A stretch of DNA of 64,000 nucleotides from Trichoplax adhaerens (Eukaryota; Animalia; Placozoa): assembly GCF_000150275.1 (NCBI RefSeq), contig NW_002060953.1, positions 1,089,693-1,153,692 on the forward strand, given 5' to 3'. Position 1 is the first letter of the stretch. Every line of letters begins with the position of its first letter. Below the pieces are notes generated by a model that saw only the letters and a program-made list of their open reading frames with translations, did not search any database and was not told the DNA's origin. A program made the translations under genes and the position numbers. Shown here in pieces: positions 1-20,379 of the stretch.

Positions 1-2
1 AA

Positions 3-3000
3 GCCGCTAAATTGTTAGCTAAAGCTAACATTGAAGCCAAGAAAGTAGAAACCAGGGCTAAACTAGAGCATGCTAAATTGCTTTCTGATGTTCAAATTAA
101 ATCCATGAAACTGAAAGAAAATGCCGAAATACGATCGAAAGAACTAATTCACGATAGCGAAGTTGCTACTTTAACCATGAAATTGGAAGCAGATGCTAAA
201 GTAGCTGAAATTAAAAAGGATTTTGTCTACGCTAGTCGATGTAAGGCAGAAAGTAAAGCACAAAGTAAAATTATGGCGATTAATGTTGAAAAAGAGTTGA
301 AAGAATATCAAGCTAAAAATGCCATCAAATTAGTAGAATTAGAAGGTCAAAATCAACATGATCAAGTCATGATTAGTGTCGAAGGCGAAGCGAGTATCAT
401 TATTGCTGAAGCGAAAGGAGAAGCGGAAGCCATACGTGAAATTGCCAATGCTAATGCAAATATGGTTTTAGCTCAAGCTGAAAAAGAAGCCAACGATGCT
501 CGAGCTGCTGGCAATGAAGCGAAAGCTAAAAAGATACTTGCTGAAGCTAATTATCAAGCTGAGATATTGAAAGCAGAAGCTGAAATTCAAGCTGTTCAAA
601 TATTAAGTGATGCCAAAATAAAAGCCAATCAATTACGCTCTGAAAAAGAAGCAGAAATTATCAAGCAATGCTACGAAAATGAAGCACGAGTTATAGGTGA
701 AAATTTTACAAGTTTAGATGCTACTGGTGAGAAAGCAGGTAAAGTAAAAAGCGATGCAATTTTATTGAAAGCAGAAGAGAAATCGACATTTGTTGCTGTC
801 AAAGCTGAACGAGAAGCGAAAGCTGCTGAAAATGATGGTGATCTCATTCGAGCTGCAGAACTTCGAGCAGAAGCTTGCACAAGTACTCATACCATTAAAG
901 CAACTGCTCAAGCTGATGCCACCTTAGCTGAAGCTGAAGAGAAAGCCGAAGCTATTACAGCTCAAAGTGAAAGCGATGCTATGGCTGCTATTCGAAAATC
1001 AATCGGTGAAGCAGAATCAATCCTTGCTACTACTCGTGCTCAAGCTGAAAATGTTCGAATCGATTATAAACGAAAATCCAATGAAATATTACAAAAAGCA
1101 AAGATACAATCGCAAAAGTTACGCACTGAAGGGAAAGAAAAAGCTGCTGATGAATGCTTACGACGAGGTGAAGCAGAAGCAGCTAAAGTTGCAGCTGAAG
1201 GTGAAGCAAAATGTGGAAAAATTAATGCTGAAGGTGCTGCTAAAGCCGATAAAGCTAAAATTGCTGGTGAGGAAAAAGCTGTTCAAATTAAAACTGCTGC
1301 TAAAGCCAAAGTTACCGAAATGATGCTAGATGCAAAAGCCAATGCCAACAAAGTTAAAGAAGAAGCCAAAGCGACAGCTGTTCGCGAATCCAATACTATC
1401 TTAGCTCGAGGCTATCGTAAATCGCGCGATGAAGTTAAAGCTGTTGCTTTACAAGCTGAAGCAAATAAGGAATATTCTAAACAGATGGAAAAAGCGCAAT
1501 CAACGACAGCAAAATTACTTGCACAAAAAGATATTGAAGTAAAAGCAGTCAATGTTCAAGGAGAAGCTGAAATGGAAAGATTGAAAACTACTGCAGAAGC
1601 GGTTAGCGTTAAATCGCATGCTAAAGCTGCTGCAATCACTGCTATCATGGACGCAGCAGCCGATACAGCGGTTAAAAAAATCAACCAAAAGAATGACCAA
1701 GTTATCCTACAGTCTGAAATGAAAGGGAGAGAAGATGCTGCTCGCTTATTAAAAGATGGTATTACTGAAGCAACAAGGATGATTATTGATGGTGAAGAGA
1801 AAGCTCAACGTTTAAAAACTAAAGTAGCTATTGAAGCTGTCCGAGCTAGAGTATCTGCTGAAAGTGAAATATTACAATATACAGCGGATAAAGCTGAAGA
1901 GAAACGTGAAGGGATTCAACAATCGATTAAACAATTGACAGCACAAGCTGAACAAGAAATCAAGAAAGTCCTTACATCTGGTAATGAAGTTCGTGCTAAT
2001 GCTATTCGAGAAGATTTAGCAACAAAAATTGAAGTGATGGAACTAGAAGGACAAGTACTGACCAAACATTTAAGTGAACGTGCTAAAATGGAAGCGGAAC
2101 GTATCAAAATGGCTGGTAAAATTAAAGAAAATAAAATTTTAAAATTTGCCGAAGCTGATATTACCATTGCTACTGCAGCAACATTAGCTGAAGCGAGCAA
2201 AGAGAAAGCAATTAAAGATGCTGAATTTGTCAAGAATAAATCTTTAGCTGAAGCCAATTTAGCTAAAAATAAAGGTGAAAAAGAAGAAGTTATTGATGCT
2301 ATTATCAACGACGGTAAACAAGAAGCGGAAAGAATTACTAAAGATGCTGAAGTAATTTCATTACGATTAATGGCAGAAGCACGCGCTAAAGCAACTAAAT
2401 TAAGAGCCGAAGCAAGTGCTGAAGCTGAATTGTTAACCGCTGAACAAAATGCAGAAGTGTTAAAAAATCAAATGTCGGAAGCTGCCGATGCAGCGATTGT
2501 AACTGGCAAGAAAGAAGCTGCTAGCGTACGCTTAAAAGCGAAAGAAAATGCACGCGAATCGGATTTACGCAATAAAAAGAATGCCGCTACTCGTGCATTA
2601 GTTAATGGTGAAATAGCTGCTGAAGTTGCCTTAACAAAATCAGTAACAGATTCTATCCAAAAACGAGCTCATGGTGAAAATACCGCAGCGGTAACAACGA
2701 TGGAAGGTAAAGTGAAATCGATTAAAACAATCACTCATGGCGATATTGAGGCTGTCAAGATAAAATATGATGGTAAAATTGCTGAAGCTCAACTTCTTGG
2801 CGATGTTACTAGAGTGGAAGTATTAAAATTACAACGTGATGCTGAAGTGACTAAAATTACAGCGTTATCCGCTGCTGAATTAAGTCGTGTCAAATCGGAA
2901 GAAGAAGCAGCATCGTTATTAGCACGACGTGAAGAAGAAGCTAAAGTAGCTAAATTAAAAGCTGATCAATGTCGAAGTGCTGAAAATGTCTTATTACTGG

Positions 3001-6000
3001 AAGATAAAGCAAAAGCGGATATTTCATCAGCCAATGAGTTAGCTCAATCGATACGTGATAGTGCTGATGAAAAAATTGATGCTGCATTAGCTGATGGTGA
3101 TGGCGCTGAAGTTGAAAGAATTCGTTCACAAGCTGAAGTGAAAGCGATTAAAGCAGCAACAGAAGGAATCATCCAAGCTGTTAATCAAAAAGGTGAAGCT
3201 CGATTCAATGCTGCATCAGAAGAAGCCAAATTGGTTGCTGAAGCAGCTAAAATCAATGCAGAAGGTAAAGCATATTCAACAAGAATAGCTGCTAAAGGTG
3301 AAGCTAAATGTATACGTGCTAAAGCTGAAGCTGATGCAAAATATGTTAAAGAGATGTCAAGAGCAAAAGCGAAAGATTGCATGCGAAAAGGCCATGTTAG
3401 TGAAGCTGAAGAAGCATTACAAGCTGGTGAAGCTGAAGCAAAAAGGATAATTTCAGAAGCAACGATTGCCGCTACAAATTTAATTGCACAACGTGAAGCT
3501 GAAGCTATACAATCATTATCAGAAGGTGGTATTGAGCATGAAAAATTAAAAATTGGTAATCCTGAAACCGTTATCATTAAAGCTGAAATTGAAGCTGAAG
3601 TAATGCGTAATAATAGCAATGGTCAAATAGAAGAATGTTTATTACAATCACAAAGTAAAGCAAGATTAACAACGATTGAAGCTGAAAGGAATGCTAAAGC
3701 AGCTTTCTTAGCTGGTGATGAAGCAAAAGCAGCTGAAATCATTCTACAAGGTCATATTGCATCGGCTGAAATGATTGCACGAGGTCAAGCGGAAGCCAGT
3801 GATATTAAAGCAAAATGTGACGAAGCCATTGCTCTCAAGTTAGCTGATGCTAAAGCAGATGCTGTTAAATTAAGTTCAGAGAGAGATTCTATGGCTGCTG
3901 AAATTGAATCAGAGTTAAAAGTCAAAGCTTTCAAACTTCAAATTGAATCTGCTGCTCAAGCTGCTGCACGCCGTGGTGATCCAGAAGCTAAACGTTTAAC
4001 CATTGAAGGTGATAAAAAAATAGCTACTTTAACCTCGGACAATGATGTCAAAGTAAAAGTAATGCGTGCTGAAGGAAACGCTGAAGCAATACGATTACAA
4101 GCACAAGCTCAATCTGAAGTAGTTCTTATTCAAAGTAAAGCACAAGCGGAAAATATCCGACTTCAAGCTGATAATGAAGCAAAAGCAGCGATTGCTAAAG
4201 CAAAGCATCAAGCTGAAGCTACCCGACAACAATTAATTAATCAAGCCAATAAGGCTAAAGCCAATGGCAACGAAGATGAAAGTATCAAATTAAGAGCATC
4301 AAGTGAAGCACAAGCTGCTAGAATAATCGCTAAAGGTGAAGTGGAGGCTTGTAAAATTCGTGGTGAAGCCGTAGTCAAAGCATCAGAAGCAATCAATAAA
4401 GGGAAATTAGAAGAAAGTAGTATTCTCCATGAGGGAAGTGTTGAATATCATAAGATTAAATCAGAAGCTGAAGCCCATGCCTTACTTGATAATGATCTAG
4501 ACAACAGAGCGGAAGAAGTTGCTGATCAAGGTGAAAAGGAAATTAAACGTTTACAACAACAAGAAGATACACATGCTGATATCTTACAGTATCGTGCCCA
4601 AGCTGAAATGATTATTGCTAATGCTGAAAAAGATTTAGCATGTGAAAAGATATTATTGGAAGCTGAAATTCAAGCGTCACGTATCGAGGCAGAAGGTAAA
4701 AGTTCAATTATAACTGCTAAAATGGACAGAGAGATTGATAATGCAATCGTACGTGGTGATCATAAAGCTGCTATGGAAAGTAAAATGAAAGGTGAAATTG
4801 ATTCAAGTCAAGTGAAGACTAATGCTAACATTGCAGCAATACGTAAAAAAGCAGAAATGGAATCGAAAGCAGCGGCTACAATGGCTGAAGCTGAAGCAGA
4901 AGCAAGCCAGTTAAGAGCAGCTGAAGAAGCAAGGATTGCATTATCAAAAGATGACGAAGGCCAAGCAGCTCAAGCAATGGCCGAAGGAGAAGCTGTTGCT
5001 ATTCTTATTCGAGGTGAAGGCCAAGCTAAATCTAAAATTATTAATTCTACTGCAGACGTTGAAGTATTACAAGCTGAAGCATCGATGAAGGCCGATGCTG
5101 TACAATTAAAAGCTGAAGCAGCCGCTCATAATGCTGAATTGAGTGGCAATTCGTTATTAGCCGCTGAAATTAGAGCTAAAGGAGATGCCGATAAAGCCGC
5201 ATTAAAATTACAAGCTGATGCAGAAGCTGCAAAAGTCAATTCTTATGGTGAAGCAGAAGCTGTTTTAATTCAAGCAAAATCCAAAGAAGAAAGTATTTTA
5301 TTAAGAGCAAAAGGAAAATCAGAAGAAATAAAAGCATTCGATGAAGAAGAAGCTAATCGTATATTAGATGAAGCTCAAAGAGACGCTGAAAAAGTGATAG
5401 CGGAAGGTAATGCAGAAGCTGAACGTTTGAAAAAATTCGGTGATACTGAATATACAAGGCTACATGCTATGGCTACAATCGAATCAGACCGGCAAATTGG
5501 TCGTGGTCGAGCTCAAACAGTGAAAGAGAGCGGAAAAGAAAAAGAAGCTGCTGAAATTGAAGGTCAAGTTGAAGCTAAAAATGTAACATCTAGAGCTGAA
5601 ATAGAAGCCAATGCAGTTAAAAAACAAGCGGAAATTGAAGCTGCTAATATTCGATCACAGGCCGAGGCTCGTGCCATAGCTGTAGATAAAACTGGTAATA
5701 GTAGTGAAGCCGAGAGAATTCGTCGAGATGGAGAAGTCGATGCAACTAAAGCTCTCGCTATTGGCATGATCGAAGCTGATAGAATTATTGCAATTGGTAA
5801 GCTTGAAACTGAGTTGGAATTCGCAATGGCTAAAGTTCAAGCAGCTAAGCTTAAAGGAGATAAAAATAGTGCCATTCGACTTACAGCAGAAGCTGAAGCA
5901 AAAGTTTCTGAGCAAACTAAAATTCTCGATGCAGAAGCGTTATATCAACGTACGGAAGAAGAAGCAAAAGCATTACAGCGTAAAGGACAAAACGAGATTC

Positions 6001-9000
6001 AAGCGATTAAAAAAGCAGCTAAACAATATGTCAATAACGCTAAATCAAGTGGTAGTACTATGGCTGTATCAATTGTTACTGCTCAAGCTGAAGCAGAAAT
6101 TAATCGAATTGAAGCAGCTAGAAAAGCAGAAGCGGAAAGATTATTGACAAAGGCTAACGCTGAAAAAACACTTATAAATGCTGAAGGTAAAGTTGAAGCA
6201 ATCAAAATGATCGCCCGTGGTGAAGCAGATATAGCTGAATTACTGGATGATAATAAGAAAATTAAACAAGTTTTAAATACCGCAGAAATGGATTGTGCTA
6301 AAATATTAGCCCAAGCAACACAAGAAGCTTCACGAATTGCTGCAGAGGGCGAAGCTAGTGCTACTCAAATTCATGCTCAAGGTTTTGCAACATCGGAAAA
6401 TATTAAAGCGACAACTAATTCAACCGAAATTGAAAATCTTGGTATGAAACATAAGGCGCAAAGTATAAAAGAAGTTAAAAATGCAGAAACTAAAAGTACA
6501 GTTAAATTAGGCAAAATTGAAAGTATAAAAACACAAGAAATTGCAAAAGCTAACGCTGACAAGCAAGCTGTTGAGCGTGAAACAGAAGCTTTAAAATCGA
6601 GCGGAAATGAAGAGCAAGCTATCCTTAAAAAAGCTCAAAGTGACGCAAATTATATTATTGCTGTTGCTGCAGCTGAAAGTAAAGCTCTTCAAGCCAAAAG
6701 TTTAACTCAAGTTGCTGTTGCAAAAGCGGAACTAGAAAGTAAAATCAAGTTAAAGAAAGCGGAAAAAAATGAAAATGCTATTACTGAAATGACAGGTGAA
6801 TTAAAAGCAATTGAAATTTTAGCACAAGCTACCGCTGAAATTGATGGTACGTTACAAAATAAATTAGCAAAAATTGAAGCCGAAAAAATTATTGCTGAAG
6901 GACAAGCTGCAGTAATAAGAATGAAAGGTAATCCAGTGAAGGCAGCAGAGATGACAGCACAGATCCAAGCTAAAGCGATTAAAGCAGCTGCTAAAGCTAA
7001 AGCGGACGCTCTCAAAAATAAAGCACAATATGAAGCTAAAGCTGAAAAGATAGTAGCTGAAAGTCGTACTAATGTAGCGGAACGTTCAGGTGATAAAACC
7101 AAAGCTGACCTGACCAAAACAGTTGGTGATATTAAAGCCGGACGAATAATAGCTCTTGCTGAAGCTCAAGCTTCCCAAATTGTTGCAGAAGCGGATGCTG
7201 AATCAGATAAGCTAGTTCAATTAGGCAAGGCTGAATCGCTTAAACATAAAGGTGATGGGGCTGAAGTGAAACAATTACATGCCAAAGCAGAATCCACCTG
7301 TTTAAGAGTAAAAGCAAAGGCTTTAGCCGATGCTATTAAAATTAAGAATGAAGTTGAAGTGGAATCTAAACGCCAAATTGCAATTGCTGAGTCGAAAGCT
7401 GTTCGAGCAAACTCAGAAAAGAAGGCAGCTAATTTGGCCAAATCGAACGATAAGATTAATAGTAAAAAAGCAAAAATTGAAGGAGATATTCAAGCAGCAC
7501 GTATAATGGCAACTTGGGAAGCTGAAGCAATTACATTAAAAGCGTTTGCTGAATCCGATGCTTTACTAGCAACATGTGAATGTGATGCAGCTACGATTGA
7601 TATCATATCTTCGAATCAGGCTGATCAAATTAATGATGATGGTAATCCATCGAAGGCAACTATTTTAAAGAAAGAAGGTGAAGCAGAATCGAAGGGAAAG
7701 CGTATCGAAGGTAGATTAGAAGCTGATAAGATTAAAATACAAGGAGATTGCGAAGTGATCCGATTAAAAGCTGCAAAACAAGCTGATAATATAAGATTAA
7801 CAGCAGAGATGCATGCACATTCAGCTGAAGCTGCTAATAATCACTCTGATGCAATCCGCATTAAAGGTGATGCACAATATGATGCCGCAAAATTTCAGTG
7901 CAATGAAGAGATTAAGGCAGCAAAGATGAAATGTCAAGCAAGTGTTGAATCAATACGTAAAAATACTGCCAAAAAGATTGAAGCAGTTAAAGTTAGTAGT
8001 GAAAGAATTATGGAAGTGCATTCTGTATCAGGTGATGCAGATGAAGCTACTAAACAGCGAAAGTATTATTTAGGTAAAATATCTGTTATTGAGGCGGAGC
8101 AAGCAGCAAATGTAGCTATTGAAAAAGCTGAAGAAGAAGCTGCAATAATAAAAGCTGAAGCGAAGATAAAAGCAGCACATGTCATTCAAAATGCAGCAAA
8201 TCAAGCAGCGGAACTATTAAAGCAAGGTAAAAAATTGCAAGCCCAAAATATCACTAAACTTGCTGAAGAGGAAGCTGCTAAAATATCGCGTTTGGCTGAA
8301 ATTGAAGCTATCAATGTTAGAGCTATCGCAGAAGCAGAAGCTTTAAGATTAGTAGGCAAGGGAAAAAGTGAGGCGGCACAAATTGAAGGAGATAAAACTA
8401 AAGCTCAAAATGAATTATCTGACGCTAGAGCTAGAGCATATCTTATTGAAGCAAACAGTAAAGCAACAGTAGTGAAAAATACTGCCGAAACTGAAGCCAA
8501 TTATATATCAAGATTAGCTGAACTTGAAGCTCAAGATGATATCGAGCGTGGTAACGAAGAAGCTGCTTCCATTAAAATTTCTGAAGCGGAAGTAGAAAGT
8601 AATAGAATAAAAGGTGTAGCAGCAGTTGTGGCTGATAATATTATAGCCATTGGTGAAATTGATTCAGCATCACAAAAAGAACTTGTAAAAGCCGAATTCT
8701 TACAAGCTAATGGCCAAGAAGCTAAAGCTATCTCGGCGAAGGCTGAAGCTTTATCTGATGCAATTACCAAGAAAGGTGAAGTTAACGTTACTAAAGAACA
8801 AGAACTATTACAAGTTGAAGTGGCGGCTGCCGTACAGAAAGCAGTTGCCAATATTGAAATAGCCAAGAGTAAAAATGATCAAATTGAAGCTGATAGAATG
8901 CTAAAACTTGCAAAATTAGAGGAAGAGAAACTTAGAAAAATCTCGAAGATTAATAGCGATAAAGTTAAGAAAATATCTGTTACTGATGCCAACCTCTGTA

Positions 9001-12000
9001 AAGCCACTGCTGAAGCAAATATTGCTAAAGTTAAAGGTGATGCTAACAAATATAGTCAGTTGATGAAAGATGCAATTACTACAGCGGCAAAGAAGAAAGC
9101 TTCAATCGAAGAGCACGCTCTTAAAGCTTTTTTAGAAGTTAATGTTGCTGATGTACAACAAGTAGCTAAAAGTAATGCTATTGCTGCAAATCAAAAACAT
9201 GACAAAGTAGAAGCTGATAAAATTAAAGCTGTGAGTAAGGCCAAAATTGAAAAATTGCAAGCTAGTACTTCTGCTGAAATTGCTAAATTTCAAGGGATTG
9301 CTGCATTGGAAATCAAAGTTAGTAAAACCCTTGCAGAAGCTGGTGTTCACGAAATTAAAGGCAACAAGACTCGAGCTATTATTACAAGGTCTGAAGCAGA
9401 AGCAGAAAAAATAAGACTTACAGCTGATGCAGAAGGAAAACTTGTCGAGAGATTAGCTGAAATTGACGCTGAAGCTATAAGAATTTGTACAAAAGAAGAC
9501 GGTAAAGCAGCAAGATTACATTATACACAACTTGCGAAAAAAGAGCAAGCCGCGGGAAATCTCTTAGAAGCTGAAAAATTAAAAGCTGAAGGTGAAGCAC
9601 AAGCATACATATATAATCACCAAGCTGAAATTGAAGCAAGCAAAGCTATAGCTAAGGGAGAAGCTGATGGCCTAATAGTAAAGGCAACCGGAAATGCGGA
9701 AGCTACACAAAAAATATTTGATGGCCAAGCGGAAGTCGCTTCGATCGAAGGGAATACACTAAAATCAAATACATTAATTAATAACGGCAACGAGGCTTCA
9801 ATCTTGATCTTGGCGGAAGCTAGTGCCAAAAGAGAGAGAATATTGGCTAAAAATGAAGCGGTGTCAATACGAACGACTGCTGCTGCAGCGGCGGAAGGGA
9901 ATAAATTACGAGTTAACGCTGAAGCTGACAATGCCAGAGTTTTGGGTGATAATGTTAAAGCAGCGCAATTAGATGGCAATTGCGTAGCTGAATATTGGCA
10001 AACAGTACGCCTTGGTGAGATCGAATCCGAAAAGAGGCTTGCGCTTCTTGACGCTGAGGTAGAAATGATACATTCTAAACGTAAGAGTGACTTATCAAAA
10101 GCTCTTGGCGATGAAGTTGGTGCTAAAGTCATCATTGAAACTGGTAAAGTTCAATATGAACGTGCGAAAGCAGAAATTGAAGCAAAGTATGCTAATTTAA
10201 TTGCAGAAGTCCAGGTTGATGCGACTCTTCAGAAAGCACAGTCCGATGCAAAAGCAGCAGATAAACATGGAAAAGCAGAAGCTGCCGATGAATTCCGACA
10301 AGCGGGTAAAAATTCAGCTTTTAGCCTCAGAAGAAATAGTGTAAAGCTGCAGCATAAACGTCAAGGTGATGCTCAAGGTAGTAAATCTAAAGCGGAAGCG
10401 CTACGTAAGGCTGAAGAAATTTTATCTAAAAGTAAAAAGTTGGCTGATGGTAGTAGACAAAGCAATAATTATAGCAGTGCAGTAAAAATTTCAGCAGATG
10501 GCCGCGCTAAAGCAATTGATGTTGTCACTACAGGTGAAGCTCGAGCAATTTTAGCATATGCTAATGCAGAAGTAAAAATCGCAAAAGATAAAGGTGACGA
10601 TAAAACAGTTATACAAGCTAGAGTATTAGGTGACCAAGAAGCTGCTAAGTTGCAGGCCTTAGGTGAAGCGGAAGCACGACGTTTGAATCTGGTGGGTAAA
10701 GCTTCAGCATTAAGATTAGATTCACAAAATCAAGCCAATATATTAGATAAAAAGACACTTTCCGAAATTGAAGCAGCACGTGAAGTTGGTAATAAAGTTG
10801 GAGCAATTAATGTACAAGCTGATGGTCATATACGTAAAGAGCAATTACTTGTAGAAGCAACTGCAGAAGCTATCAAAATTGAAGCGTTAGCAGAAGCTGA
10901 ATTTTATAGAATCAAAACCTTAGGAGCAATTTCAGCCGCTCAAACTGCAAATGACACATTAGAAGTCTATAAATTGGAAACATCATCTAAAATCGAAATT
11001 GAAAAATTGAAAACAATGGGTGAAATTGAAGCCAATCGTGTCATTGCTATTGGTGAAGTTAATAATCAAAATATAAGAGATGAAGCTGAAATCAACAAGG
11101 CTGAATTAGCTGGTGATACTGATCGAGCTGATAGATTAAAAGCAGAACATGAAGTAAAAGATATCCAATGGAGAGCCAAAGCAGAAGCAGAATCAGTTAA
11201 AGCTAAAGCTGAGCTTAATGCAAAACTAACTATCTTAAATGCTGAAAAAGAAGCTGAGATTAAACGTCGAGAAGGCGATGAGAAAAATGCACAGCAGATA
11301 TTAGCTGAAGCTAAAGCAACAGCAAAATGTATACGTGCAGATGGCGATACAGAAGCGACTAGAATTTTAGCTCTTGCTAATGTTGATTGTGAAAATGTGA
11401 AAGCATTGGCTGAACTAAAATCATCGCAAAAAGTTCTTGAAAATCAAATTAATAATGCTGAGGCTACAGATCAGAAGAAAAATGTAATTCGATTGAAAGC
11501 ATCACAAGAAATTAATGATGTTTTACAAAAAGCAACAGCAGATGCGAAACGAATATTTGGTATTGCCGCTGCTGAAGCTAATGGAGTTAAAGCCGCGTTA
11601 GATAATAAAAGTAAATCTGTGGATGATAAGATGGAACAAGCGAAACTGCAAAAATCATCGAAATTGGAATCGGAAAAGATAAAATTTATTGGAAATGCTA
11701 ATTCGACTAAAGCTAATATTCTTGGTGAAATTGAAGCCGAAAGGATCAAAGCTTACAGTGAAGCAGAAATTGCACGCGTAGATGACAATGAAGAAATTGC
11801 AATCCGTTTAGAGACGGCTGCTGATGTCAAGGCAGTCAGGCTTGAAGCAGAAGCTAAAATCAAGAATGTTAAGGCAGTTGCCTTACAAGAAGCTCAATTT
11901 GCAGCATTAAAAATGGAAGCTAATGCAGAACATGCACTCGCAAAAAATGATGAAATTGAAGTAAATAACCTTAAATACCAAGGTCAATTGGAAGCGCAAT

Positions 12001-15000
12001 TAATTATTAATGTAAGTGATATCGACTCAGCCTTACTAACTAGGTTAGCCGAAATAGAAGCTAATAAAGTTAGTTTGTTAGAAAAATCAAGAATATCTAA
12101 ATTGGATAATGATAGTATTGAAGTAGAGAAAGAAATAACTGCAGTTGAAATCAATGCCATCGAACGAAAAGCTATCGTTAAAGCTGATGCGATGAAAGCG
12201 AAAGCTAAATTAAAAGCTGAAGCCGCAAATGAGATTGCCCACAGTAATGCTCAAGCAGCACTAAAAAAAGGAGATAAAATTTTAGCTGAAAGATTCATTT
12301 TGGAAGGTGAAGCGGAATCCAAAAATATTATTGCTAGGAGTGAAGTAGAAGCAGAAGAAATTCTCGCTTTAGCAGTTGCGGAAACGCAAGAGCTAAAGGC
12401 AAATTTAAGCGTGATTATTGCTGAAGTAGAGGATAAAGGAGACCATGAAGCTATCCAATTGGAAAATGAAGTTAACATTCTTCGAGCGAAAACTAGTGCA
12501 GAGGTAAACTACATACTAAAAAGTAAAGAGCTAGACGCACAAGTCTTTGAAGCAAAAGAAAAATTTAAAGCTGAAGAATTAGAGAAAAAGGGCAATGCCA
12601 TTGAAGCTACAAAAATAAGAGCTTACGCCGCCGCTGAAACAAATAAAATTCGTGCCCTAGCTGATGTTGAAGCTAAGCAGTTACAAACAGAATGTGAAAT
12701 TGATGTATTAAAAACTCAGGCAATTACTAGAGTTGCCAAAGCAAGACAGTCAGGAGATGCAGCTAAGGCAATCAATATTGAGACAGAGATGAATGTAGAT
12801 ACAGTCTTATTAGAGACTGCAACAGAAATAGAAAGTATTAGGGCAGCTGCTAGAGCAAACGCTAATTTGATTATTGAAAAAGCTAGAGCGGATGTAAATG
12901 CACTACAGTCTCAGTATAATCTAAAAATAGCTCAGGCTAAAGCTAATAATAATATCGAAGAAGCAGATTCATTGCAAAAGCAGTGTTCTACGGAAGTCTT
13001 GGAAATTATTTCAAAAGCTGAAGCTGATGCCTGTATGATTGAAGAAGATGCTAAGGCTGATTGTGAACGTTTAGAAATGGCATGCAAAGCAAATATTGTT
13101 AGACTTAAGGCCGCAAGTTCTGCAGAGAAAGCACGAAATGAGGGTAAATTTGCAGAAGCTGCTCAATTTGAAATTGATGGTGAGAAACAAGCATTAGAAA
13201 TAGAGATCGAAGGTGAAATTATTGCTGCAAGAATTCGATCAGAGGCCAAGGCTCAAGCCATCCTAATTAAATCGAAGGCAGAAGCAGCTGCAGCTAGATT
13301 ATCAGGAAATGATATGAAAGCGTCAAGAATACTTGCTGAAGGCGAAGCTTTAGCTAATAGCACTATTACGGAAGGAGAAGCAACAGCTGATAAATTAAAG
13401 CTGGAATTAGCAATCAAGCAATCACAACTTAAGAACGGCTACAGAGAACTGGGTGCCATTGAAGCTGAATATAAATCAAATACCGAACAAATAAGAGCCG
13501 ATGGTAGAATAAATGAAATTAGAATGCGCGCTACAGTAGATGCAGAAGCTGCAGTTTTAAATGCTGAACGAAAAGCTGAGGCTGCTAAAGCTTCTGGAAA
13601 CCATCACGAAGCTGAGCATTTAATCGCTGAGGGTAAAATAAATGCGAAGAAAATTGTAACTTTAGCTGACGCCGAAGCTGAACTGTTGAAAGCATTAGAT
13701 GAAGCTACTACAAATTTAACCCAAGTTAAAGCTCAAGTTGCAGCTCTTAAAGCTTCTGGCGATGAAGAGAAAGCAATCAGGATGGAACTCCAAGCTGAAA
13801 TACGTGCGGCAGAACTCAGAGATGCTGCTAGGATAGCTTATACCAGAAAAAAGGCAAAAGCCGATTCAGATGCTATTCGTGCTCTTGCTAACAGTAGTGC
13901 AGAATTAGCCCGTAAGCAAGGAAATGCAGAAAAAGCAGAAATGATATTAAAGGAAGCAAATATTAAACTGAAAGAAGTTGAATTAATCGCTGAAGCAGAA
14001 ATTGAATCAATTCTGACTGATGGATCGATTCAAAATGAGCTAAAGAAATCATTGGCAGAAGCGGCGATTGCTAAACTTAAAGGTCATAAGCAAGATGCTG
14101 TCAAGCTACAATATGCAGGTGAAGCAAGGGCAGCTATTCGGTCTTCAGAAATTAAAAGTAATCTAGAAAAGACAAAGGCCGGCATTTTTGCTGATACAAT
14201 TTTGCAGCTTGCTGAACTGAAAGCCGAAGAAGCAAAAGCTAAGGGAGATAATGTAGAAGCTGATAAAATACTAGCTGAAGCAATGGCCAAAGCAGAATTA
14301 AAAAGAGCTTTAGCAGAAGCTGACGCTTTCGAATTAACGTCTGCTGGTAAGATAAATGCAAATAGAGCAGAAACAAGTACCGCATCGGAAATCGCAAAAT
14401 TACGCGGCGATCTGAAAGAATCTAACAAATTACAAACATCGAAGGAGATTAAAACTGCAAAACAAACTGCTACAATGCAAGAAACAGTCGCTCAAATGCG
14501 CGCTGATGCTAGGGCTAAATATAATGAAGCTTCAGCTGCAACTGCAACCGCAGCATTTAAGTCAAAAAGTGATGAAATTAACGCTGAAGTTGCTTTAGCT
14601 ATTAACAAAGCAGATAATGCGAAAATAGCAACCCTAACGAAAATTAAGGGTGACTTACAAAAGAAATTAGCGGACATTGAAACTCAAAGGCTATCAAAGT
14701 TAGGAGAAGCTGAAGCACTTCGATTAAAAGGAGAGACTGAAAAAGCTGATCAGATAGTTATGGAAGCGAACACCAAAGCTGCTGTTGAGAAAGCTGAGGC
14801 GCAGTCTGCGTCCGTAAGGGCCTCTGCTGAAGCTGAAATTTTATATAACAAGCAATTAGCTGAAGCTAGAGCTACTGCCGCTAACAAATTAGGAGACCGA
14901 CAGAAAGCAAATATGATCTTAGCTGAAGACGGTATAGAAGCTACATGTGTCAATGATACTGCTGAAGCTGAAAGTACGTTAATTGAGAAATTAGCAGACA

Positions 15001-18000
15001 TCGAATCAGAAAAGATATTAAAACTAGGTGAAGCAGCAGCTGCTGCAGCTATTGGCGAAGATGAGAAAGCAATTAGGCTAATTGCCATATCTAAAGCTAA
15101 TGCAGCTAAAAAAGCCGCAGAAGCTAGAGCAGCTTTTACACTGATGCAGGCAGAAGCTGAAGTCAAAAAAGCGAACGGTTTAGCGAGAGCGGCTACCAAA
15201 AATGCGGCAACAGAAATTGAGACTATTGAGGCGAAAATGTTAAAGAATACCGCAGAAGCTCATTCAAATTGTATCCAAGATGTAGCAGAAGCTAAGGCAT
15301 CCCGTGCGATCTTACAGGGTAATGTCGAAGGTCAAGAATTTCATGCTATAGCTGATGCGGAAATAGTTCTACTGAAACTTAAAGCGGGTGATATAGCTGA
15401 AGATGAGTGTAGAGAATACAAAACAGAAGCAGAAAAGATCAAAGTTAGCAATAAAGTTAATAAATTATCTACAATTACAAATGAAGATATCCGCGTATCC
15501 GACACTATTGCAAAGTCAAAGGCCGAAGAAATTACGAAGACTGCTGTAGAAAAGGCTCTAGCAGCTAGATCTAAAGCACAATGGATGGCGGCTGAAGCAA
15601 GACGTAAAGGAGAACAAGAGCAAGCCGAAGAAAAATCAAAAGACGGTGAATTGGAAGCAATTAAGTTAAATGCTGAAGGCGAGGCAGAAGCTGTAATTCT
15701 ACTAGCTGAAGGTGAAGCGGAGGCTGCTGAATACAGTTCAGAATGCGATGCAGCGACTGCTCTAGCAAAAGCTAACTTTAGAGCTGAAGAAGCCAAACTA
15801 TATGGTGATGTGGAGAGAGCGATAGAGATTAATAAAGAAGCTGCTGATGATGCTCTTAAATTTAGAGCTGCAGGTAAAGCCAAAGCAATACGTATCAGGA
15901 TCGAAAGTAAAGCACTAGCTGCCATGATAAAATCTGAGGCAGAAGCTGAAATTGCTAGAATGGTAAATGATGAAGAGAAAGCCGAGGAATTGATTGCTGA
16001 TGGATTAGTTGAAGTAGAGTTAATAAAATGTGAAGGTGAAGTTGCTGCTGAAAGGCTTCTTGCTGATGCTGATGTTGCCATATTGCGGAAGAAAGGCCTA
16101 GAAGCAGAAGCGGTCACCTTAATAGCTGAGAAGGAAGCACTTATTGCTCGAATAATTGCTGAAACTGAATCTAGAATTGCAGCTATTCGAGGTAATAAAG
16201 AACGCGCTAAGAAGATCATTGCTAAGAATGAACAGTCATCTAAAATGGTTTTCACTATTGGTGATATCGCTGCTAAAAATTATCGAATGCGACAAGGCGT
16301 ATTTAGGCCTAAGCCAGGTCCAAAAGGTGGTCGATTAAATGATATCGGTAACAAAGATTACTTTTCTCGTGATGGTCAACGTAAACTCGGTCCACCGTTT
16401 AATGATAGAGGAATTGGCGATATAGGCACTAAGGCTTATCGATTAAGGGATGGAGATAAGCAAGACAATCTTTATAAACATAGAGATCATGATCTACTTG
16501 ACATTGGAACAAAATTATATCGATTCCGTGAAGCTATCGCAGTGAAAAAAGCTGCTCCGCGGATCTCAGTTGATGACCGAATTAAATTAGCTCAACAAAG
16601 ATTAATAGAGTTAGAAATGAAGCGACAAGAACACGCTGAACGAAAGCGTGTCCAGAGAGAAGAGCGAATTAAAAATCTAGATGCTCATAAGCGAGGTTAT
16701 AAATAATTATAATTTGCTGTTATTCTTAGCTTGTTAAAAGGTTATTGAATGGTTATATTGCTAATATTTACTTGTAGGGTATAATACTTATTTATGTATT
16801 GATTAATTTTTACTTCTTATCAATTTCTAATCATTTATAATTTATTTATAGCGATGCGCTTAAAGTATAAGAAGAGAATAGTTAAGAAACCCCCGGAAAA
16901 GTTACAGCCTACCCTACCACCGACAGCGAATGATATGGAGAAATTGATGAAGCAACGAAGACTATCTAGGAGATTATCCAAACCTAAGTTGATTAAGGAA
17001 AAGACGGAAGTAATTGTTCCCGAAGAGCCACCTAAAGAGCCTGAAGTTGTTGAGGAAGAAGTCAAGGTTGAAGGTAATTTTTGATCTAAGCGGGTAGTAA
17101 TTCGTATTAAAATTATACTACAAATTCCTTCTGTTACATTTTGTAAAATGAATCGTAATTATACTTACTACAATTTAATCGTCTACAGAAAAAGATGAGA
17201 AGGCAGAGGAAGCAAAGAGAATGGCTGAGGAGGCCGAAGCCGCTCGCAAACTAGCAGAAAAAGCAGCTATTGAAGCAGGTATATATTTAACGAATTTTAA
17301 TTTAAGTAATGTAATTATAAAAGATTTCAATCTAATGTTTTAGTTAGAGCAATTAAATGAAAGAATTAATTAAATGGTATAATGGTCAAATATATTGAAA
17401 ATTGAAATTGTAAACGATTATGTTAATCTTAAGTGTTATAAAATGGCACTAGTTGATCGAATTTCGAATAAGGTGTGTATTTTAATTTCAATAGCTAGTG
17501 AAAAAGAGAAAGAAGAAGCAGAGGAAGTTCTTAAAGTGGCTGACTCTCAAGCTCGAGCGCAGAAAAATAAAGCCCTTCGAGCTAATCTCGCATCTGCCGT
17601 CTCTGCTCGCGATAGAGTAAAGATTGAAATCGCCATTGAAGAAGTCACACCACTTGTTGAAGAAATCCCAGAAGTAAAGGAAGAGATAGATGACGCTACG
17701 AAGCTTTACAAACGTTTGACTGGGCAACATTTGGTCGATGTTGCTATTGAAACCCGGAAAATGCCCGATGTAGAAAAAGCTGTCATTTACGTTAAAAAGG
17801 AAGGCTTAGAGGAATTTATTGGTGAAAAATTCGATTATGTTTCCAACGTTTATGGTCGATTGAAACGGTTGGAAAAGATGCGACAAGAAGTTGTCAACTT
17901 AAAGCAGACGAACGTTGCTGAAATTCGTAGTTATCAGAATCCTCATCCTTCAGTCCGCAATATTATGATTGCAACTCACATATTATTGGGACACACTGAA

Positions 18001-18410
18001 AAAGAGGTTCGTAATTGGAAAGTTATGCAGGCTTTGATTGGTAAAACTGGCAAGCAAGGATTAAAAAGACGTGTCGATGATTGCGATACCGATAATATTC
18101 CTCTTCAAGCAGCAAAGAAAGCGCAATCTCTCATTAAAGGATTAGATGTTGATTCTGTTCGTGATATTAGCGGTGGAGCTGGTGTTTTCTTTGGTTGGGT
18201 ATGTATAAAATGTTTATAAATGTATACGAATTAATTATACCTATAGAAATATCTTAAAGATGTTTTGAAGTCTCTATTTATGCATCATTTATAAACTCTG
18301 CATTATTATTAGAGTTAATCAACATTAGAACTTACTATTATTGCTGTAAAATAATTTAGGTCCAAGGTACTGCCGAAGTGGTATTTACAAGGGAAGAGAA
18401 AATTGGTTAA
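3..18410 (+). CDS. Giant (>5,900 aa, 5'-incomplete) Ala/Glu/Lys-rich alpha-helical repeat protein with C-terminal dynein MTBD-like domain
   Basis: Frame is open from the window start; the TTG at 12 is not a real start. Hand-spliced exons with GT-AG sites and consistent phases: <3-16695, 16852-17073, 17189-17278, 17495-18198, 18360-18410 (ends ...FFGW|VQGTAEVVFTREEKIG*). This model joins ORF-track entries 12..16706, 16854..17084 and 17395..18219. Confidence 0.9.
17899..18410 (+). other. Dynein heavy-chain stalk-head (microtubule-binding domain)-like region
   Basis: LKQTNVAEIRSYQNPHPSVRNIMIATHILLG...NWKVMQALI...DCDTDNIP...LDVDSVRDISGGAGVFFGWVQG follows the dynein MTBD pattern L.K..L.E(I/V)(R/K)S...PP..V......C.LLG....W.......F....I.......V...S.A...L..W(V/A). 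Recognised by eye, no HMM run. Confidence 0.7.
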
Positions 18411-20379
18411 TACCACTTAGCCATTTATGACAGGATCATATTAAAATTGTCGGTAATACTTATATCATCAACGCTCTAGTTGGATTGTATCTTAATCGTT
18501 ACCATATTGTCCATGTCATAAAATTTATTATACTCATATGAACGTTATAAGTGATGTGTGTGTAATATGTTTAATTTCCATTCCTAGTTCAGAATAAGAA
18601 CTATAGCATAGATGATTTGCTATGGAATGCTAAGTCATTTAAATTTTACTTATGTACGTAATGACAGTCTAACCCTCGATACCGAATATTGATTTAAAAT
18701 TTAATTTCAAACCTTATTAATTATTTCTTACTTGCTCTTTATTGCTTTACGCGTATAATAATTAAATCGAACGATCGATACTAAAAGTACTAGTATCTGA
18801 ATAACAGGATTCGACAAATCCCAATTATGGACTGCTCTTAGTTTATAAGCAAAAAAAGTTTAACATCATTCTTTTTTGTTTTGAAATTAATATTAATCTT
18901 CTATATTTCCGATAAAAATTGCATGCCTATTTTTGTATGATTGAAAATACTTTTGATAAAGCATTTGGTAAAAATACTAGCTATTATATTTTGTAGTTAT
19001 GATATCCTAGGTGAAACTTTAACTCCCTATTGCCTTGGTATCTTGGTATAGAATAATGTACATCAGTTTGATATTAAAATAAAAATAACAAAAAATCAAG
19101 TATACCTAAAGAATTATCCCTTACTTTTGCTTTGTTTATTCAGTATAAACTAAATTTAAAGCTATACTATACTTGATACTTGAAATAGTCGTTAAAATGT
19201 TGCTAGAATGATGTTAACCGGTACAAAAATAACATTTCGAGTTACCTACCCTTTCGAATGCTATAAGTTTGTACGAGCGTAGAATCTGTATAAATTATTC
19301 AATTTTTACGTAACTAACGCAATTAGTAACCTATATTTAGTCTACATTTCTTGTAACCAGCTCGGCTGCAATCAGTAAACATTCGTCTGACTCTTCCAGT
19401 GTGACGTTTGCATTAATAATAATTAAATATTAAGTTGCAGTAGCAACAAGTCACTATTGATTCTGAGGTTAGAGTAATAACTTGGCTTCAATCGGGCTAA
19501 GGAATCCGATAATACAATATCACTAAGAAATCGTTTTAGTCAATGTAATAGTTTATCGCTATATATATACACTGTACACGAGTATATATTACAGGCAGTA
19601 AACGTTCCAAGATGTATTTTAACAACATCCAAAATGAGCTATACTTTAATTAAGCATTCAGCTAAGGCTGAGGGCAGTTAATTATTCCAAACTTCACGAT
19701 AAATCATTTACAATGACCCTGAGGACATACAGACATACACGACTTTTATACACGTGAAGTAGGTTAACGAAGTTTACAAAATGAACATAAGTTTTTAGCG
19801 TACTATGCGGAATTTAGTAAGTACAAAAGGTTAGATTCATCATACGAAATAAAGATAATTATTAATAAAATGAGCTAAAATAACTAGATAGGACGGATCA
19901 TATTAATAATAATTAAATTATAGGAGTGTTTTACAAGAGATATAGTTGAAATTGATATACTGTAAAGAAAAACTGTTATTAGATAATGGTAAAATGAATG
20001 AATACATGGAACAAGTAAAGAACACATCATTGAGTAGACTGGAGAATCACATAAATTATTATAGCACATGATGCAATTTTTACACTGAATCAGATATACG
20101 CAACATTTACAAATGTAGTATTGGCAAAATGACCTATTCCATTGCAAAGATCTCTTCCCTTCACAAATTTAAAGCAGCATGATGAAATAATCACGTAAAG
20201 AATCAAGACGAAACAATTTAAATACCAGAATATGACAAGCAAATTTGGAAAAAATCAGGTTAATGTAATTTGAAATGAAAAAAAATCTACAAAGAAAGCT
20301 CGATCATGTAAGTATACCACCATTACTAACATACTATTAATTCAACTAGGGAACTGTAGATACTGAATATTATTCAATT

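What the first reader, a model, noticed from the sequence alone, without database searches (positions are those of the whole stretch)
17899..18410. Dynein-type microtubule-binding domain at the tip of a giant rod protein with no motor domain in view
Seen: the last ~115 aa of the spliced giant protein (LKQTNVAEIRSYQNPHPSVRNIMIATHILLG...W...D..NI...V..IS..A..FFGWV) follow the order and spacing of dynein MTBD helices H1-H6, and the protein stops about 15 aa later. Established: in dynein this domain sits on the CC1/CC2 stalk emerging from the AAA4 ring and is followed by AAA5/AAA6. Seen: there are no Walker motifs in the ~5,900 aa visible and no long return strand. Inference: an MTBD detached from its motor and placed on a very long helical rod could be a passive microtubule tether or cytolinker (e.g. 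ciliary rootlet, cortex or fibre-cell cytoskeleton). This is the best candidate here for an undescribed system. The N-terminus is outside the window.
Basis: partly seen in the sequence, partly recalled or inferred. Interest (0 to 1): 0.9.

Follow-up and report, generated by a model that had tools for sequence, protein, structure and literature searches.

The report
Motorless dynein-type microtubule-binding domain on giant protein
The last ~230 residues of a ~6,550-residue placozoan-like protein are a true relative of dynein's microtubule-binding tip with no motor attached. The same end-piece sits at the C-terminus of many non-motor proteins of marine invertebrates, so it looks like a portable cytoskeleton anchor that I found described in no paper.

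Summary
Window 17899-18198 plus the last exon, 18360-18410, encode a dynein-type microtubule-binding domain (MTBD). The protein stops 16 residues after the final Trp.

- **Homology.** A family profile hits only dynein stalk tips among the 60 solved structures listed (best E 9e-14). A profile-profile comparison with this genome's own dyneins gives probability 99.2%, E 1.3e-19. An AlphaFold model (pLDDT 94.9) superposes on dynein MTBDs at 2.2-2.8 Å, Z 10-14.
- **Gene model.** RNA contigs confirm all four introns in the window.
- **No motor.** The N-terminus, 5.4 kb upstream of the window, is an EF-hand-fold head. The 6,029-residue giant exon has no Walker A motif. There is no return strand (CC2).
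- **New context.** The gene is the giant paralog of an animal-wide family of about 550 residues: EF-hand head, charged linker, this module. A normal-sized paralog lies elsewhere in the same genome.
- **Other carriers.** The module also ends KY-transglutaminase/CARD proteins. It also ends the presumed cytoplasmic tails of CLCA/VWA membrane proteins.
- **Untested.** Microtubule binding is inferred, not shown. A basic cluster is conserved, but two dynein contact arginines are not.

I found no paper describing this family. The scan had noted the neighbouring head and rod of the same gene.

The parts
1..16695 (+). 3' 16.7 kb of the giant exon. The exon starts upstream at L004:8609 = G000:C1404:1088301 and is 18,087 nt, about 6,029 codons. 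It encodes an Ala/Glu/Lys/Ile-rich helical rod.
   Evidence: The surrounding open frame has 6,040 codons without a stop and no Walker A motif; composition A 19.5, E 12.7, K 11.3, I 8.3 %. Residue autocorrelation peaks at lags 11, 22, 54 and 108. There are no DNA tandem repeats. RNA contigs of 17-19 kb cover it.
16852..17073 (+). Small exon encoding a basic, Pro-rich linker (MRLKYKKRIVKKPPEK...).
   Evidence: GT..AG joints 16695|16852 and 17073|17189 are seen in contigs of 3 runs. Both introns are phase 1.
17189..17278 (+). Small exon encoding a 30-residue charged helix-type linker.
   Evidence: Joints 17073|17189 and 17278|17495; reading frame read.
17495..17820 (+). Helical base of the conserved C-terminal module (residues 1-108 of the exon-5 translation).
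   Evidence: It is conserved in family members from residue ~2-26 onward. The AF2 model has helices 2-37, 40-55, 58-86 and 89-102, pLDDT >90. The only fold matches are weak spectrin-repeat-like ones, Z 7-8.
17824..17895 (+). CC1-like helix that leads into the MTBD (residues 110-133). It lacks the conserved CC1 proline of dynein.
   Evidence: The model has a helix at 110-133. It aligns to the end of dynein CC1 in hhalign and in VIA (3err_A, model 100-234 vs 3262-3393). In the alignment the seven own-genome dyneins have the Pro and the family does not.
17899..18198 (+). Dynein-type MTBD, helices H1-H6 (residues 135-234), ending in ...GAGVFFGW.
   Evidence: Profile vs PDB E 9e-14. hhalign probability 99.2%. 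Foldseek 6kjn rmsd 2.5 Å over 115 columns. VIA Z 10.2-14.4 for 11 dynein entries. An unbiased search of 48,161 chains ranks dynein 1-5.
18040..18072 (+). Family-specific basic motif GKTGKQGLKRR (residues 182-192). It carries a 3-residue insertion relative to dynein, just after H3.
   Evidence: Alignment with own-genome dyneins. Column conservation in A1: G185 96%; positions 183, 186, 190 and 191 are 84-87% basic.
18360..18410 (+). Last coding exon: 16 residues (VQGTAEVVFTREEKIG) that finish H6, then the TAA stop. There is no CC2.
   Evidence: Joint 18198|18360 in RNA contigs. Translation. Family members end a median of 5 residues after the end of the profile match.
18411..18670 (+). 3' untranslated region (its end is approximate).
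   Evidence: RNA contigs run on to 18597-18600 and about 72 nt further.

Best explanation
The window holds the 3' end of one gene of about 6,546 codons (about 720 kDa). The order is: an EF-hand-fold head, a ~6,000-residue helical rod in a single exon, two short linker exons, and a conserved ~250-residue C-terminal module.

The module is a helical base, a CC1-like helix and a six-helix domain homologous to the dynein heavy chain's MTBD. It has no CC2 return strand, no stalk prolines and no AAA+ ring. So it cannot be switched by helix sliding as in dynein.

Most likely it is a constitutive, nucleotide-independent anchor. It would dock the C-terminal tip on the acidic microtubule surface through the conserved H1 Glu-x-Arg/Lys-Ser motif and a family-specific basic cluster (GKTGKxxLKRR). 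The head would hold another partner and the rod would set the distance.

The gene is the giant paralog of an animal-wide family of about 550 residues. The same module is also used as a C-terminal end-piece by single-pass membrane proteins (on the presumed cytoplasmic side) and by KY-transglutaminase/CARD proteins.

Shown: homology, fold, gene structure, absence of a motor, and the family and its architectures. Inferred: microtubule binding, the tether role, and the junction of exon 1 with the giant exon.
For: **Homology and fold**
- Profile vs PDB: best E 9e-14 and all 60 listed hits are dynein stalk tips.
- hhalign vs seven dyneins of the same genome: probability 99.2%, E 1.3e-19.
- The same profile finds those dyneins in the genome at E 1e-16 to 1e-5.
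- AF2 model: pLDDT 94.9, pTM 0.77.
- Dynein MTBDs are the top fold matches in Foldseek, in VIA on Foldseek's list (Z 10.2-14.4) and in the unbiased VIA search (ranks 1-5 of 48,161).

**Gene model**
- Four GT..AG joints are seen in RNA contigs, one of 19.3 kb.
- Exon 1 (L004:4300-4786 or -4801) and the giant-exon acceptor (L004:8609) are both phase 1.
- Exon 1 is 47% identical to the head of a 547-residue family member that carries the same C-terminal module.
- The head model (pLDDT 93.1) matches sorcin, calmodulin and calpain penta-EF-hand domains.

**No motor**
- No Walker A motif in the giant exon and no + strand ORF downstream.

**Family**
- 524 cluster representatives at E<=0.001.
- Orthologues occur in ctenophores, a sponge, cnidarians, molluscs, annelids, a brachiopod, echinoderms, hemichordates, amphioxus and tunicates.
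- The module is terminal in 139 proteins, with a median of 5 residues after the match.
- CLCA/VWA proteins have a signal peptide, one membrane helix, then a tail ending in the module. This places the module in the cytoplasm, where microtubules are.

**Binding surface**
- The MTBD part has pI 9.7 and net charge +5.
- E142 is invariant, position 144 is 96% basic, and positions 183, 186, 190 and 191 are 84-87% basic.
Against: - No binding test was possible.
- Two arginines that I recall as dynein-tubulin contacts are not kept. The H3 Arg is Gln in the family. The H6 Arg position holds Asp/Glu in most of the family members aligned.
- Dynein's affinity depends on the CC1/CC2 registry (PMC6629372). 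With no CC2, the state of this domain is unknown.
- The best non-dynein fold match belongs to a radial-spoke entry (7jtk_C, Z 12.2). I could not establish which protein it is or whether it touches tubulin. So the fold may not guarantee microtubule binding.
- The junction of exon 1 with the giant exon was not seen in RNA.
Confidence: 0.6

Rival explanations
1. The module is a true descendant of the dynein MTBD but has been re-purposed. It would bind something other than the microtubule lattice, such as another filament, an acidic membrane surface or a protein partner. The proteins that carry it would then not be microtubule tethers.
For: - The dynein H3 Arg is Gln, and the H6 Arg position is acidic in most of the family members aligned.
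- The family hallmark is a new basic insertion that dynein lacks.
- The family is split from all seven own-genome dyneins by a long, fully supported branch (100/100).
- A radial-spoke chain of undetermined identity has a similar fold (7jtk_C Z 12.2, 7jrj_I Z 8.2).
Against: - The H1 Glu-x-Arg/Lys-Ser motif, the Pro after H1 and the core Trp are kept as in dynein.
- The conserved surface charge is basic, as expected for a tubulin binder.
- In every membrane-protein architecture examined, the module follows the membrane helix at the C-terminal end.
- A Toxoplasma microtubule-bound globular domain, probably ICMAP2, shares the fold weakly (9ya2_L Z 7.4; PMC12819142).
Confidence: 0.32
2. The likeness to dynein is chance or convergence of a small helical bundle, and the domain is unrelated to dynein.
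For: - Pfam MT is below its gathering score (13.6 vs 24 bits).
- Foldseek E-values are modest (0.0025-0.3).
- Helical bundles often give middling Z-scores (notes).
Against: - Profile E-values are 9e-14 and 1.3e-19, in register over all six helices.
- The same Pro, Trp, Ser and Gly landmarks line up.
- Dynein entries fill ranks 1-5 of an unbiased search of 48,161 chains and stand 2-6 Z units above the next matches.
Confidence: 0.02
3. It is a gene-model artefact: a stray dynein fragment or pseudo-exon next to an unrelated giant repetitive ORF.
For: Giant open frames in AT-rich genomes can be spurious. The exon 1 junction was not seen in RNA.
Against: - Single RNA contigs join the giant exon to all downstream exons with canonical splice sites.
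- Both ends of the gene match the two ends of the same ~550-residue family.
- A paralog with the same order of parts lies on another contig.
- A related placozoan-type sequence is 88% identical over the C-terminal exon.
Confidence: 0.02

Closest known systems
Dynein heavy chain stalk tip: the microtubule-binding domain (Pfam PF12777 'MT'; structures 3ERR, 6RZB, 6KJN)
   Same: - Six-helix domain with the same helix order.
- Same landmarks: H1 Glu-x-Arg-Ser, Pro after H1, LLG at the end of H2, Trp at H3, Ser-x-Ala-Ala...Trp in H6.
- Superposes at 2.2-2.8 Å over 106-122 residues.
- Preceded by a CC1-like helix.
   Different: - No CC2 return strand, no AAA+ ring, no stalk prolines.
- Sits at the extreme C-terminus.
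- Has a 3-residue insertion giving the GKTGKxxLKRR motif, and a shorter H5-H6 loop.
- The H3 and H6 arginines are not kept.
- Rests on an upstream helical base instead of an antiparallel stalk.
Non-motile dynein heavy chains (DNAHX, DNHD1, and the 'dead AAA1' dynein noted elsewhere in this genome)
   Same: They carry dynein parts that appear to be used without motor activity.
   Different: They keep the whole heavy-chain architecture (ring, stalk, CC2). Here only the tip survives, on unrelated proteins (bioRxiv 10.1101/2025.01.18.633724, seen only as a listing; scan note s1-747282).
Long rod-shaped cytolinkers with a terminal microtubule-binding module (spectraplakins such as MACF1/ACF7 with EF-hands plus a GAR domain). 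This comparison is from my own knowledge.
   Same: EF-hand domain, very long helical rod, and a C-terminal module proposed to bind microtubules. The overall logic of a spacer between two binding ends is the same.
   Different: - The EF-hands are at the opposite end.
- The rod is not made of recognisable spectrin repeats; Pfam finds nothing in it.
- The terminal module is dynein-type, not GAR/GSR.
- No calponin-homology actin-binding domain.
Non-dynein solved chains with an MTBD-like fold: Chlamydomonas radial-spoke chains 7JTK_C / 7JRJ_I, and Toxoplasma intraconoidal-microtubule chain 9YA2_L (probably ICMAP2)
   Same: - Fold similarity to the model's MTBD part: Z 12.2, 8.2 and 7.4.
- ICMAP2 is a long coiled-coil protein whose small globular domain sits on the microtubule wall (PMC12819142).
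   Different: - No sequence relation was shown.
- Chain identities are inferred from residue numbers only.
- Z values below about 8 can be common helical arrangements.
- The ICMT paper does not mention dynein or an MTBD in connection with ICMAP2. I did not read a paper on the radial-spoke structures.

Membership tests
Dynein MTBD (Pfam PF12777 'MT', stalk tip) | Six short helices H1-H6 in the dynein order and packing | tested here: met
   AF2 model pLDDT 94.9. rmsd 2.2-2.8 Å, Z 10.2-12.5 to isolated MTBD structures. Dynein takes ranks 1-5 of 48,161 chains.
Dynein MTBD (Pfam PF12777 'MT', stalk tip) | Significant sequence relation to dynein heavy-chain stalk tips | tested here: met
   Profile vs PDB E 9e-14. 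hhalign probability 99.2%, E 1.3e-19. The single sequence against Pfam's own model is below the cut-off (13.6 vs 24 bits).
Dynein MTBD (Pfam PF12777 'MT', stalk tip) | Held between two antiparallel stalk helices CC1 and CC2, with conserved prolines at the junction | tested here: not met
   A CC1-like helix is present. The protein ends 16 residues after the H6 Trp. Both prolines are absent in the family and present in all seven own-genome dyneins.
Dynein heavy chain | AAA+ ring (AAA1-AAA6) around the stalk, with Walker motifs | tested here: not met
   No GxxxxGK[ST] in the giant exon. Pfam finds no AAA domain in about 5,800 residues. The N-terminus is an EF-hand-fold head. The transcript ends about 260 nt after the stop.
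Dynein MTBD (functional definition) | Binds the tubulin intradimer interface | not testable with these tools
Only indirect signs exist: basic conserved cluster, pI 9.7.
EF-hand head / charged linker / C-terminal module family (unnamed; auto-annotated as 'trichohyalin-like' or 'EF-hand domain-containing') | N-terminal ~150-residue EF-hand-fold head homologous to that of family members | tested here: met
   47% identity, E 2e-41 to P0008. 40% identity to the own-genome paralog. The fold matches sorcin/calmodulin.
EF-hand head / charged linker / C-terminal module family (unnamed; auto-annotated as 'trichohyalin-like' or 'EF-hand domain-containing') | C-terminal ~220-residue module ending 13-45 residues after the H6 Trp | tested here: met
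   E 1e-41 to 1e-28 to full-length members, aligned from residue ~2-26 to 234. Tail statistics.
EF-hand head / charged linker / C-terminal module family (unnamed; auto-annotated as 'trichohyalin-like' or 'EF-hand domain-containing') | Short (150-400 residue) Glu/Lys/Arg-rich linker; total length 500-800 residues | tested here: not met
   Here the linker is about 6,100 residues, Ala/Glu/Lys/Ile-rich, with an 11-residue period. The short form exists as a paralog at G000:C1414:11145937-11149901.
Canonical Ca2+-binding EF-hand | 12-residue loops with Asp/Asn/Ser ligands at positions 1, 3 and 5, Gly at 6 and Glu at 12 | tested here: inconclusive
   By eye on the model's loops none of the four loops is canonical; the third reads D-T-E-R-R-G-T-I-S-V-M-E. 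Pfam finds no EF-hand in this head. Some orthologues carry precomputed EF-hand hits.

The most novel reading that the evidence does not exclude
Dynein's microtubule-binding tip exists as a free-standing, portable cassette in non-vertebrate animals. It would be a nucleotide-independent microtubule anchor recruited to the C-terminus of unrelated proteins: EF-hand rods, single-pass CLCA/VWA membrane proteins, and KY-transglutaminase/CARD proteins. In placozoans one copy would cap a rod hundreds of nanometres long. That would make a molecular tether or ruler between microtubules and whatever the EF-hand head binds. It would be a new class of microtubule-associated proteins. It would also be a natural experiment on what the MTBD does without stalk registry control.
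Probability: 0.5. Interest if true: 0.78.

Novelty: new variant of a known kind. Interest (0 to 1): 0.7.

Why it matters
In the structural literature I read (PMC6629372), the dynein MTBD is described only as the tip of the motor's stalk, with its affinity set by sliding of CC1 against CC2.

A conserved, widespread family that keeps the tip but drops CC2 and the motor raises two points:
- The domain can presumably fold and work on its own.
- The family offers a registry-free version for biophysics.

It also suggests a class of microtubule anchors in most animal phyla outside vertebrates, arthropods and nematodes, including membrane receptors and CARD-bearing proteins.

For placozoan biology, it marks one of the largest proteins of the animal as a candidate link between microtubules and a second, EF-hand-bound partner. 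That can be tested with antibodies to the two ends.

If the module does not bind microtubules, the case is still useful as an example of a motor part re-used for another purpose.

Tried and rejected
- **Pfam alone.** Pfam on the single sequence gives only E 0.035, below the cut-off. It is not enough by itself, and Pfam finds nothing in the rod.
- **Tubulin complex test.** I fetched alpha- and beta-tubulins and aligned them (A2, A3). The two homologue searches spent on it therefore led nowhere, and there is no verdict on binding.
- **Own-genome tubulins.** The eight tubulin genes I looked at are split by an intron near residue 60-75, so none could be used by reference.
- **Literature.** Searches for a dynein-like MTBD in non-dynein proteins found nothing relevant. 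A search for a giant Trichoplax coiled-coil protein also found nothing.
- **PDB chain 7JTK_C.** Its identity could not be settled from the papers held.
- **Other placozoans.** The contig of a related placozoan-type sequence (P0151) has only 330 nt upstream. It says nothing about a rod there.
- **DNA tandem repeats.** There are none in the rod, so it is not a recent amplification.
- **Contact residues.** The paper read (PMC6629372) gave only K3299 and the general interface. The H3/H6 arginine comparison rests on my memory of earlier mutagenesis work and on the alignment.
- **Joined protein.** Every search used single exons by reference, and the length was obtained by adding exon lengths.
Full report
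**What is in the sequence**

The window is G000:C1404:1089693-1153692 of a 105.6-Mb, 1,414-contig, AT-rich, intron-bearing genome. Another scan note calls it placozoan.

Position 17899 opens the codons for LKQTNVAEIRSYQNPHPSVRNIMIATHILLG.... This exon ends at 18198 on Trp, with a GT donor at 18199. After an AG at 18358-18359, the last exon (18360-18410) reads VQGTAEVVFTREEKIG and stops at TAA.

**Gene model**

I laid contigs of four public runs on 15800-18600.
- Three runs show the spliced form. One is recorded as RNA-Seq (X10); two are only guessed to be RNA (X4, X8).
- The GT..AG joints are at 16695|16852, 17073|17189, 17278|17495 and 18198|18360.
- The fourth run keeps the introns, as genomic DNA would.
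- One contig is 19.3 kb long. It runs from deep in the giant exon to about 260 nt past the stop.

Upstream DNA (L004) shows that the giant open frame begins at an AG acceptor at L004:8607-8608. The exon therefore starts at L004:8609, in phase 1.

About 3.8 kb further up lies an ATG-initiated exon, L004:4300 to 4786 or 4801. It has two possible GT donors, both in phase 1.
- Its product is 47% identical (E 2e-41) to the N-terminal head of a 547-residue protein that carries the same C-terminal domain.
- I did not see this junction in RNA. It rests on phase compatibility and on the orthologues' architecture.

Adding exon lengths gives 19,641 nt, or 6,546 codons (five more with the second donor). 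All searches were exon by exon, by reference.

**Is it a dynein MTBD?**

Sequence evidence:
- Pfam's MT model gives only 13.6 bits, E 0.035 (cut-off 24), but over the right part of the model.
- The single exon against all PDB sequences has dynein heavy chains as 10 of its 12 hits, all weak (best E 0.0013).
- An exhaustive search of 1.84 billion representatives found 524 proteins at E<=0.001 and 199 at 1e-10.
- A profile of 45 of these (A1), searched against PDB, listed 60 hits, all dynein stalk tips, the best at E 9e-14.
- The same profile finds this genome's own dyneins at E 1e-16 to 1e-5.
- A profile-profile comparison with seven of them (A5) gives probability 99.2%, E 1.3e-19 over 119 columns, from the end of CC1 through H6.

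Structure evidence:
- An AlphaFold2 model of the 234-residue exon has pLDDT 94.9 and pTM 0.77.
- Foldseek's top matches are dynein MTBDs; 6KJN superposes at 2.5 Å over 115 columns.
- VIA-align gives Z 10.2-14.4 for eleven dynein entries.
- A search of 48,161 representative chains that does not depend on Foldseek puts dynein at ranks 1-5.

The alignment shows the shared landmarks and the differences.
- Kept: H1 Glu-x-Arg/Lys-Ser-aromatic, the Pro after H1, LLG at the end of H2, the Trp at H3, and Ser-x-Gly/Ala-Ala...Phe-x-x-Trp in H6.
- Different: a longer H2-H3 loop; a 3-residue insertion that creates the family hallmark GKTGKxxLKRR; a shorter H5-H6 loop; and loss of both stalk prolines.

On a small tree, the family and the seven dyneins fall on two sides of a 100/100 branch. 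It used 10 family rows and 7 own-genome dyneins; other dyneins were left out, and the root is unknown. So the domain is homologous to dynein but forms its own clade.

**No motor**

- The 6,040-codon open frame that holds the giant exon has no stop and no Walker A motif.
- Pfam finds no AAA domain anywhere in it.
- The head is an EF-hand-fold domain. Its AF2 model has pLDDT 93.1 and matches sorcin, calmodulin and calpain penta-EF-hand domains. The language-model look-alikes are EF-hand clusters.
- By eye its four loops are not canonical Ca2+ sites, so Ca2+ binding is doubtful.
- The protein ends 16 residues after the H6 Trp. The transcript ends soon after, and no + strand ORF follows.

**The family**

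The direct orthologues have the same order of parts: head, then 150-400 residues of Glu/Lys/Arg-rich linker, then the module. They total 500-800 residues.
- They occur in ctenophores, a sponge, cnidarians, molluscs, annelids, a nemertean, a brachiopod, a bryozoan, echinoderms, hemichordates, amphioxus and tunicates.
- They carry only automatic names such as "trichohyalin-like".
- I saw no vertebrate, arthropod or nematode among the named hits. That is not proof of absence.
- Pfam has no family for either end.

The module also closes other architectures:
- KY-type transglutaminase plus Ig-like_KY repeats, sometimes with a CARD.
- CLCA plus VWA proteins with a signal peptide and one membrane helix. 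The module lies at the end of the tail after that helix, presumably cytoplasmic (P0011 helix 731-749; P0030 helix 892-910).
- Several other membrane proteins.

In 139 proteins the match ends a median of 5 residues before the C-terminus. One pearl-oyster protein has three tandem modules.

This genome has a second, normal-sized gene of the head-linker-module type at G000:C1414:11145937-11149901 on the minus strand. Its head is 40% identical and the first 77 residues of its MTBD part are 56% identical. The window gene is therefore the giant paralog. A placozoan-type sequence from another sample is 88% identical over the C-terminal exon.

**The rod**

- It is Ala/Glu/Lys/Ile-rich.
- Residue repeats appear at lags 11, 22, 54 and 108, and hydropathy power at 11, 11/4 and 11/5 rather than at 3.5.
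- It has no DNA-level tandem repeats.
- This agrees in part with the neighbouring scan note on a hendecad rod.
- If fully extended as a helix, it would span about 0.9 µm. If the 54-residue units fold back on each other, it would be several times shorter. I could not fold it.

**How it most likely works**

Established knowledge (PMC6629372): the dynein MTBD is six short helices at the end of an antiparallel CC1/CC2 stalk. It binds the tubulin intradimer interface. Its affinity is set by the registry of CC1 against CC2.

Here there is no CC2 and no proline hinge. The CC1-like helix is preceded by a confidently modelled helical base. My inference is a rigid, constitutive binding head.

The conserved exposed charges are basic: position 144 in H1 and positions 183, 186, 190, 191 and 192. 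The MTBD part has pI 9.7. This fits an acidic target such as tubulin.

Against this, two arginines that I recall as dynein contacts are not kept: H3, Gln here, and H6, Asp/Glu here in most of the members aligned. In addition, a chain of a radial-spoke entry, whose identity and position I could not establish, has a similar fold (7JTK_C, Z 12.2).

One weak precedent points the other way. Chain 9YA2_L (Z 7.4) is, by its residue numbers and the paper's description, probably the globular domain of ICMAP2. That domain sits on the wall of a Toxoplasma microtubule (PMC12819142).

My estimates:
- Homology: near certain.
- Microtubule binding: about 55-60%.
- A re-purposed binding role: about 30%.

**Comparison and novelty**

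It is not a dynein: the ring, CC2 and the stalk prolines were tested and are absent.

It is a member of an unnamed animal family, from which it departs by a linker more than tenfold longer.

Full-text searches found no description of a dynein-type MTBD outside dynein heavy chains. Automatic cluster names in the ESM Atlas do label look-alike short mollusc sequences as "microtubule-binding stalk of dynein". So databases may have touched the family, but the searches above found no study of it. I rate it a new variant of a known kind, with interest 0.7.

Noticed in passing
G000:C1414:11145937-11149901 (minus strand; loci L027, L006, L013): A second, normal-sized gene of the same type. It has an EF-hand-fold head (40% identical), an exon of about 265 residues with EREEAERIAEEQRK repeats, then the same C-terminal module split over at least four exons. 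Like the window gene, it has His in place of the second Pro after H1.
   Followed up: partly
P0002 (Pinctada imbricata, 1,437 aa) and P0023: P0002 has a KY-transglutaminase head followed by three tandem copies of the whole ~220-residue module (516-726, 907-1132, 1271-1431). P0023 has two MTBD-like copies. So the module is not always single.
   Followed up: partly
PDB chains 7jtk_C (res 439-575), 7jrj_I (461-534), 9fqr_Xl (1344-1478), 9ya2_L (1207-1444): These chains, whose entries are not named as dynein, have an MTBD-like fold (Z 12.2, 8.2, 8.0, 7.4). They come from two Chlamydomonas radial-spoke entries, a bovine sperm axoneme chain, and a Toxoplasma intraconoidal-microtubule protein that is probably ICMAP2. 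Their identities and any sequence relation were not settled.
   Followed up: partly
L004:5175-5864 (first intron of the gene, upstream of the window): Overlapping ORFs read as near-copies of MSFLFSILRVILFFTSI..KRLSLKIT.VIPILHP..YFILH. This points to a tandem DNA repeat of about 90-180 nt inside the intron.
   Followed up: no
window 1-16695: The rod shows residue repeats at lags 11, 22, 54 and 108 and G-[N/D] pairs often 54 apart, but no heptad signal and no DNA tandem repeats. It may be built of 54-residue helix-turn units rather than one continuous coiled coil.
   Followed up: partly
window 16852-17073: The small exon after the rod is very basic and Pro-rich (KYKKRIVKKPPEK...RRLSRRLSKPK). It has two RRLS-type motifs that look like basophilic kinase sites. 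It may be a regulated hinge before the module.
   Followed up: no
G000:C1412:7958593-8022088: A cluster of at least six alpha-tubulin-type gene copies lies within about 64 kb. All copies examined share an intron near codon 60-75.
   Followed up: no
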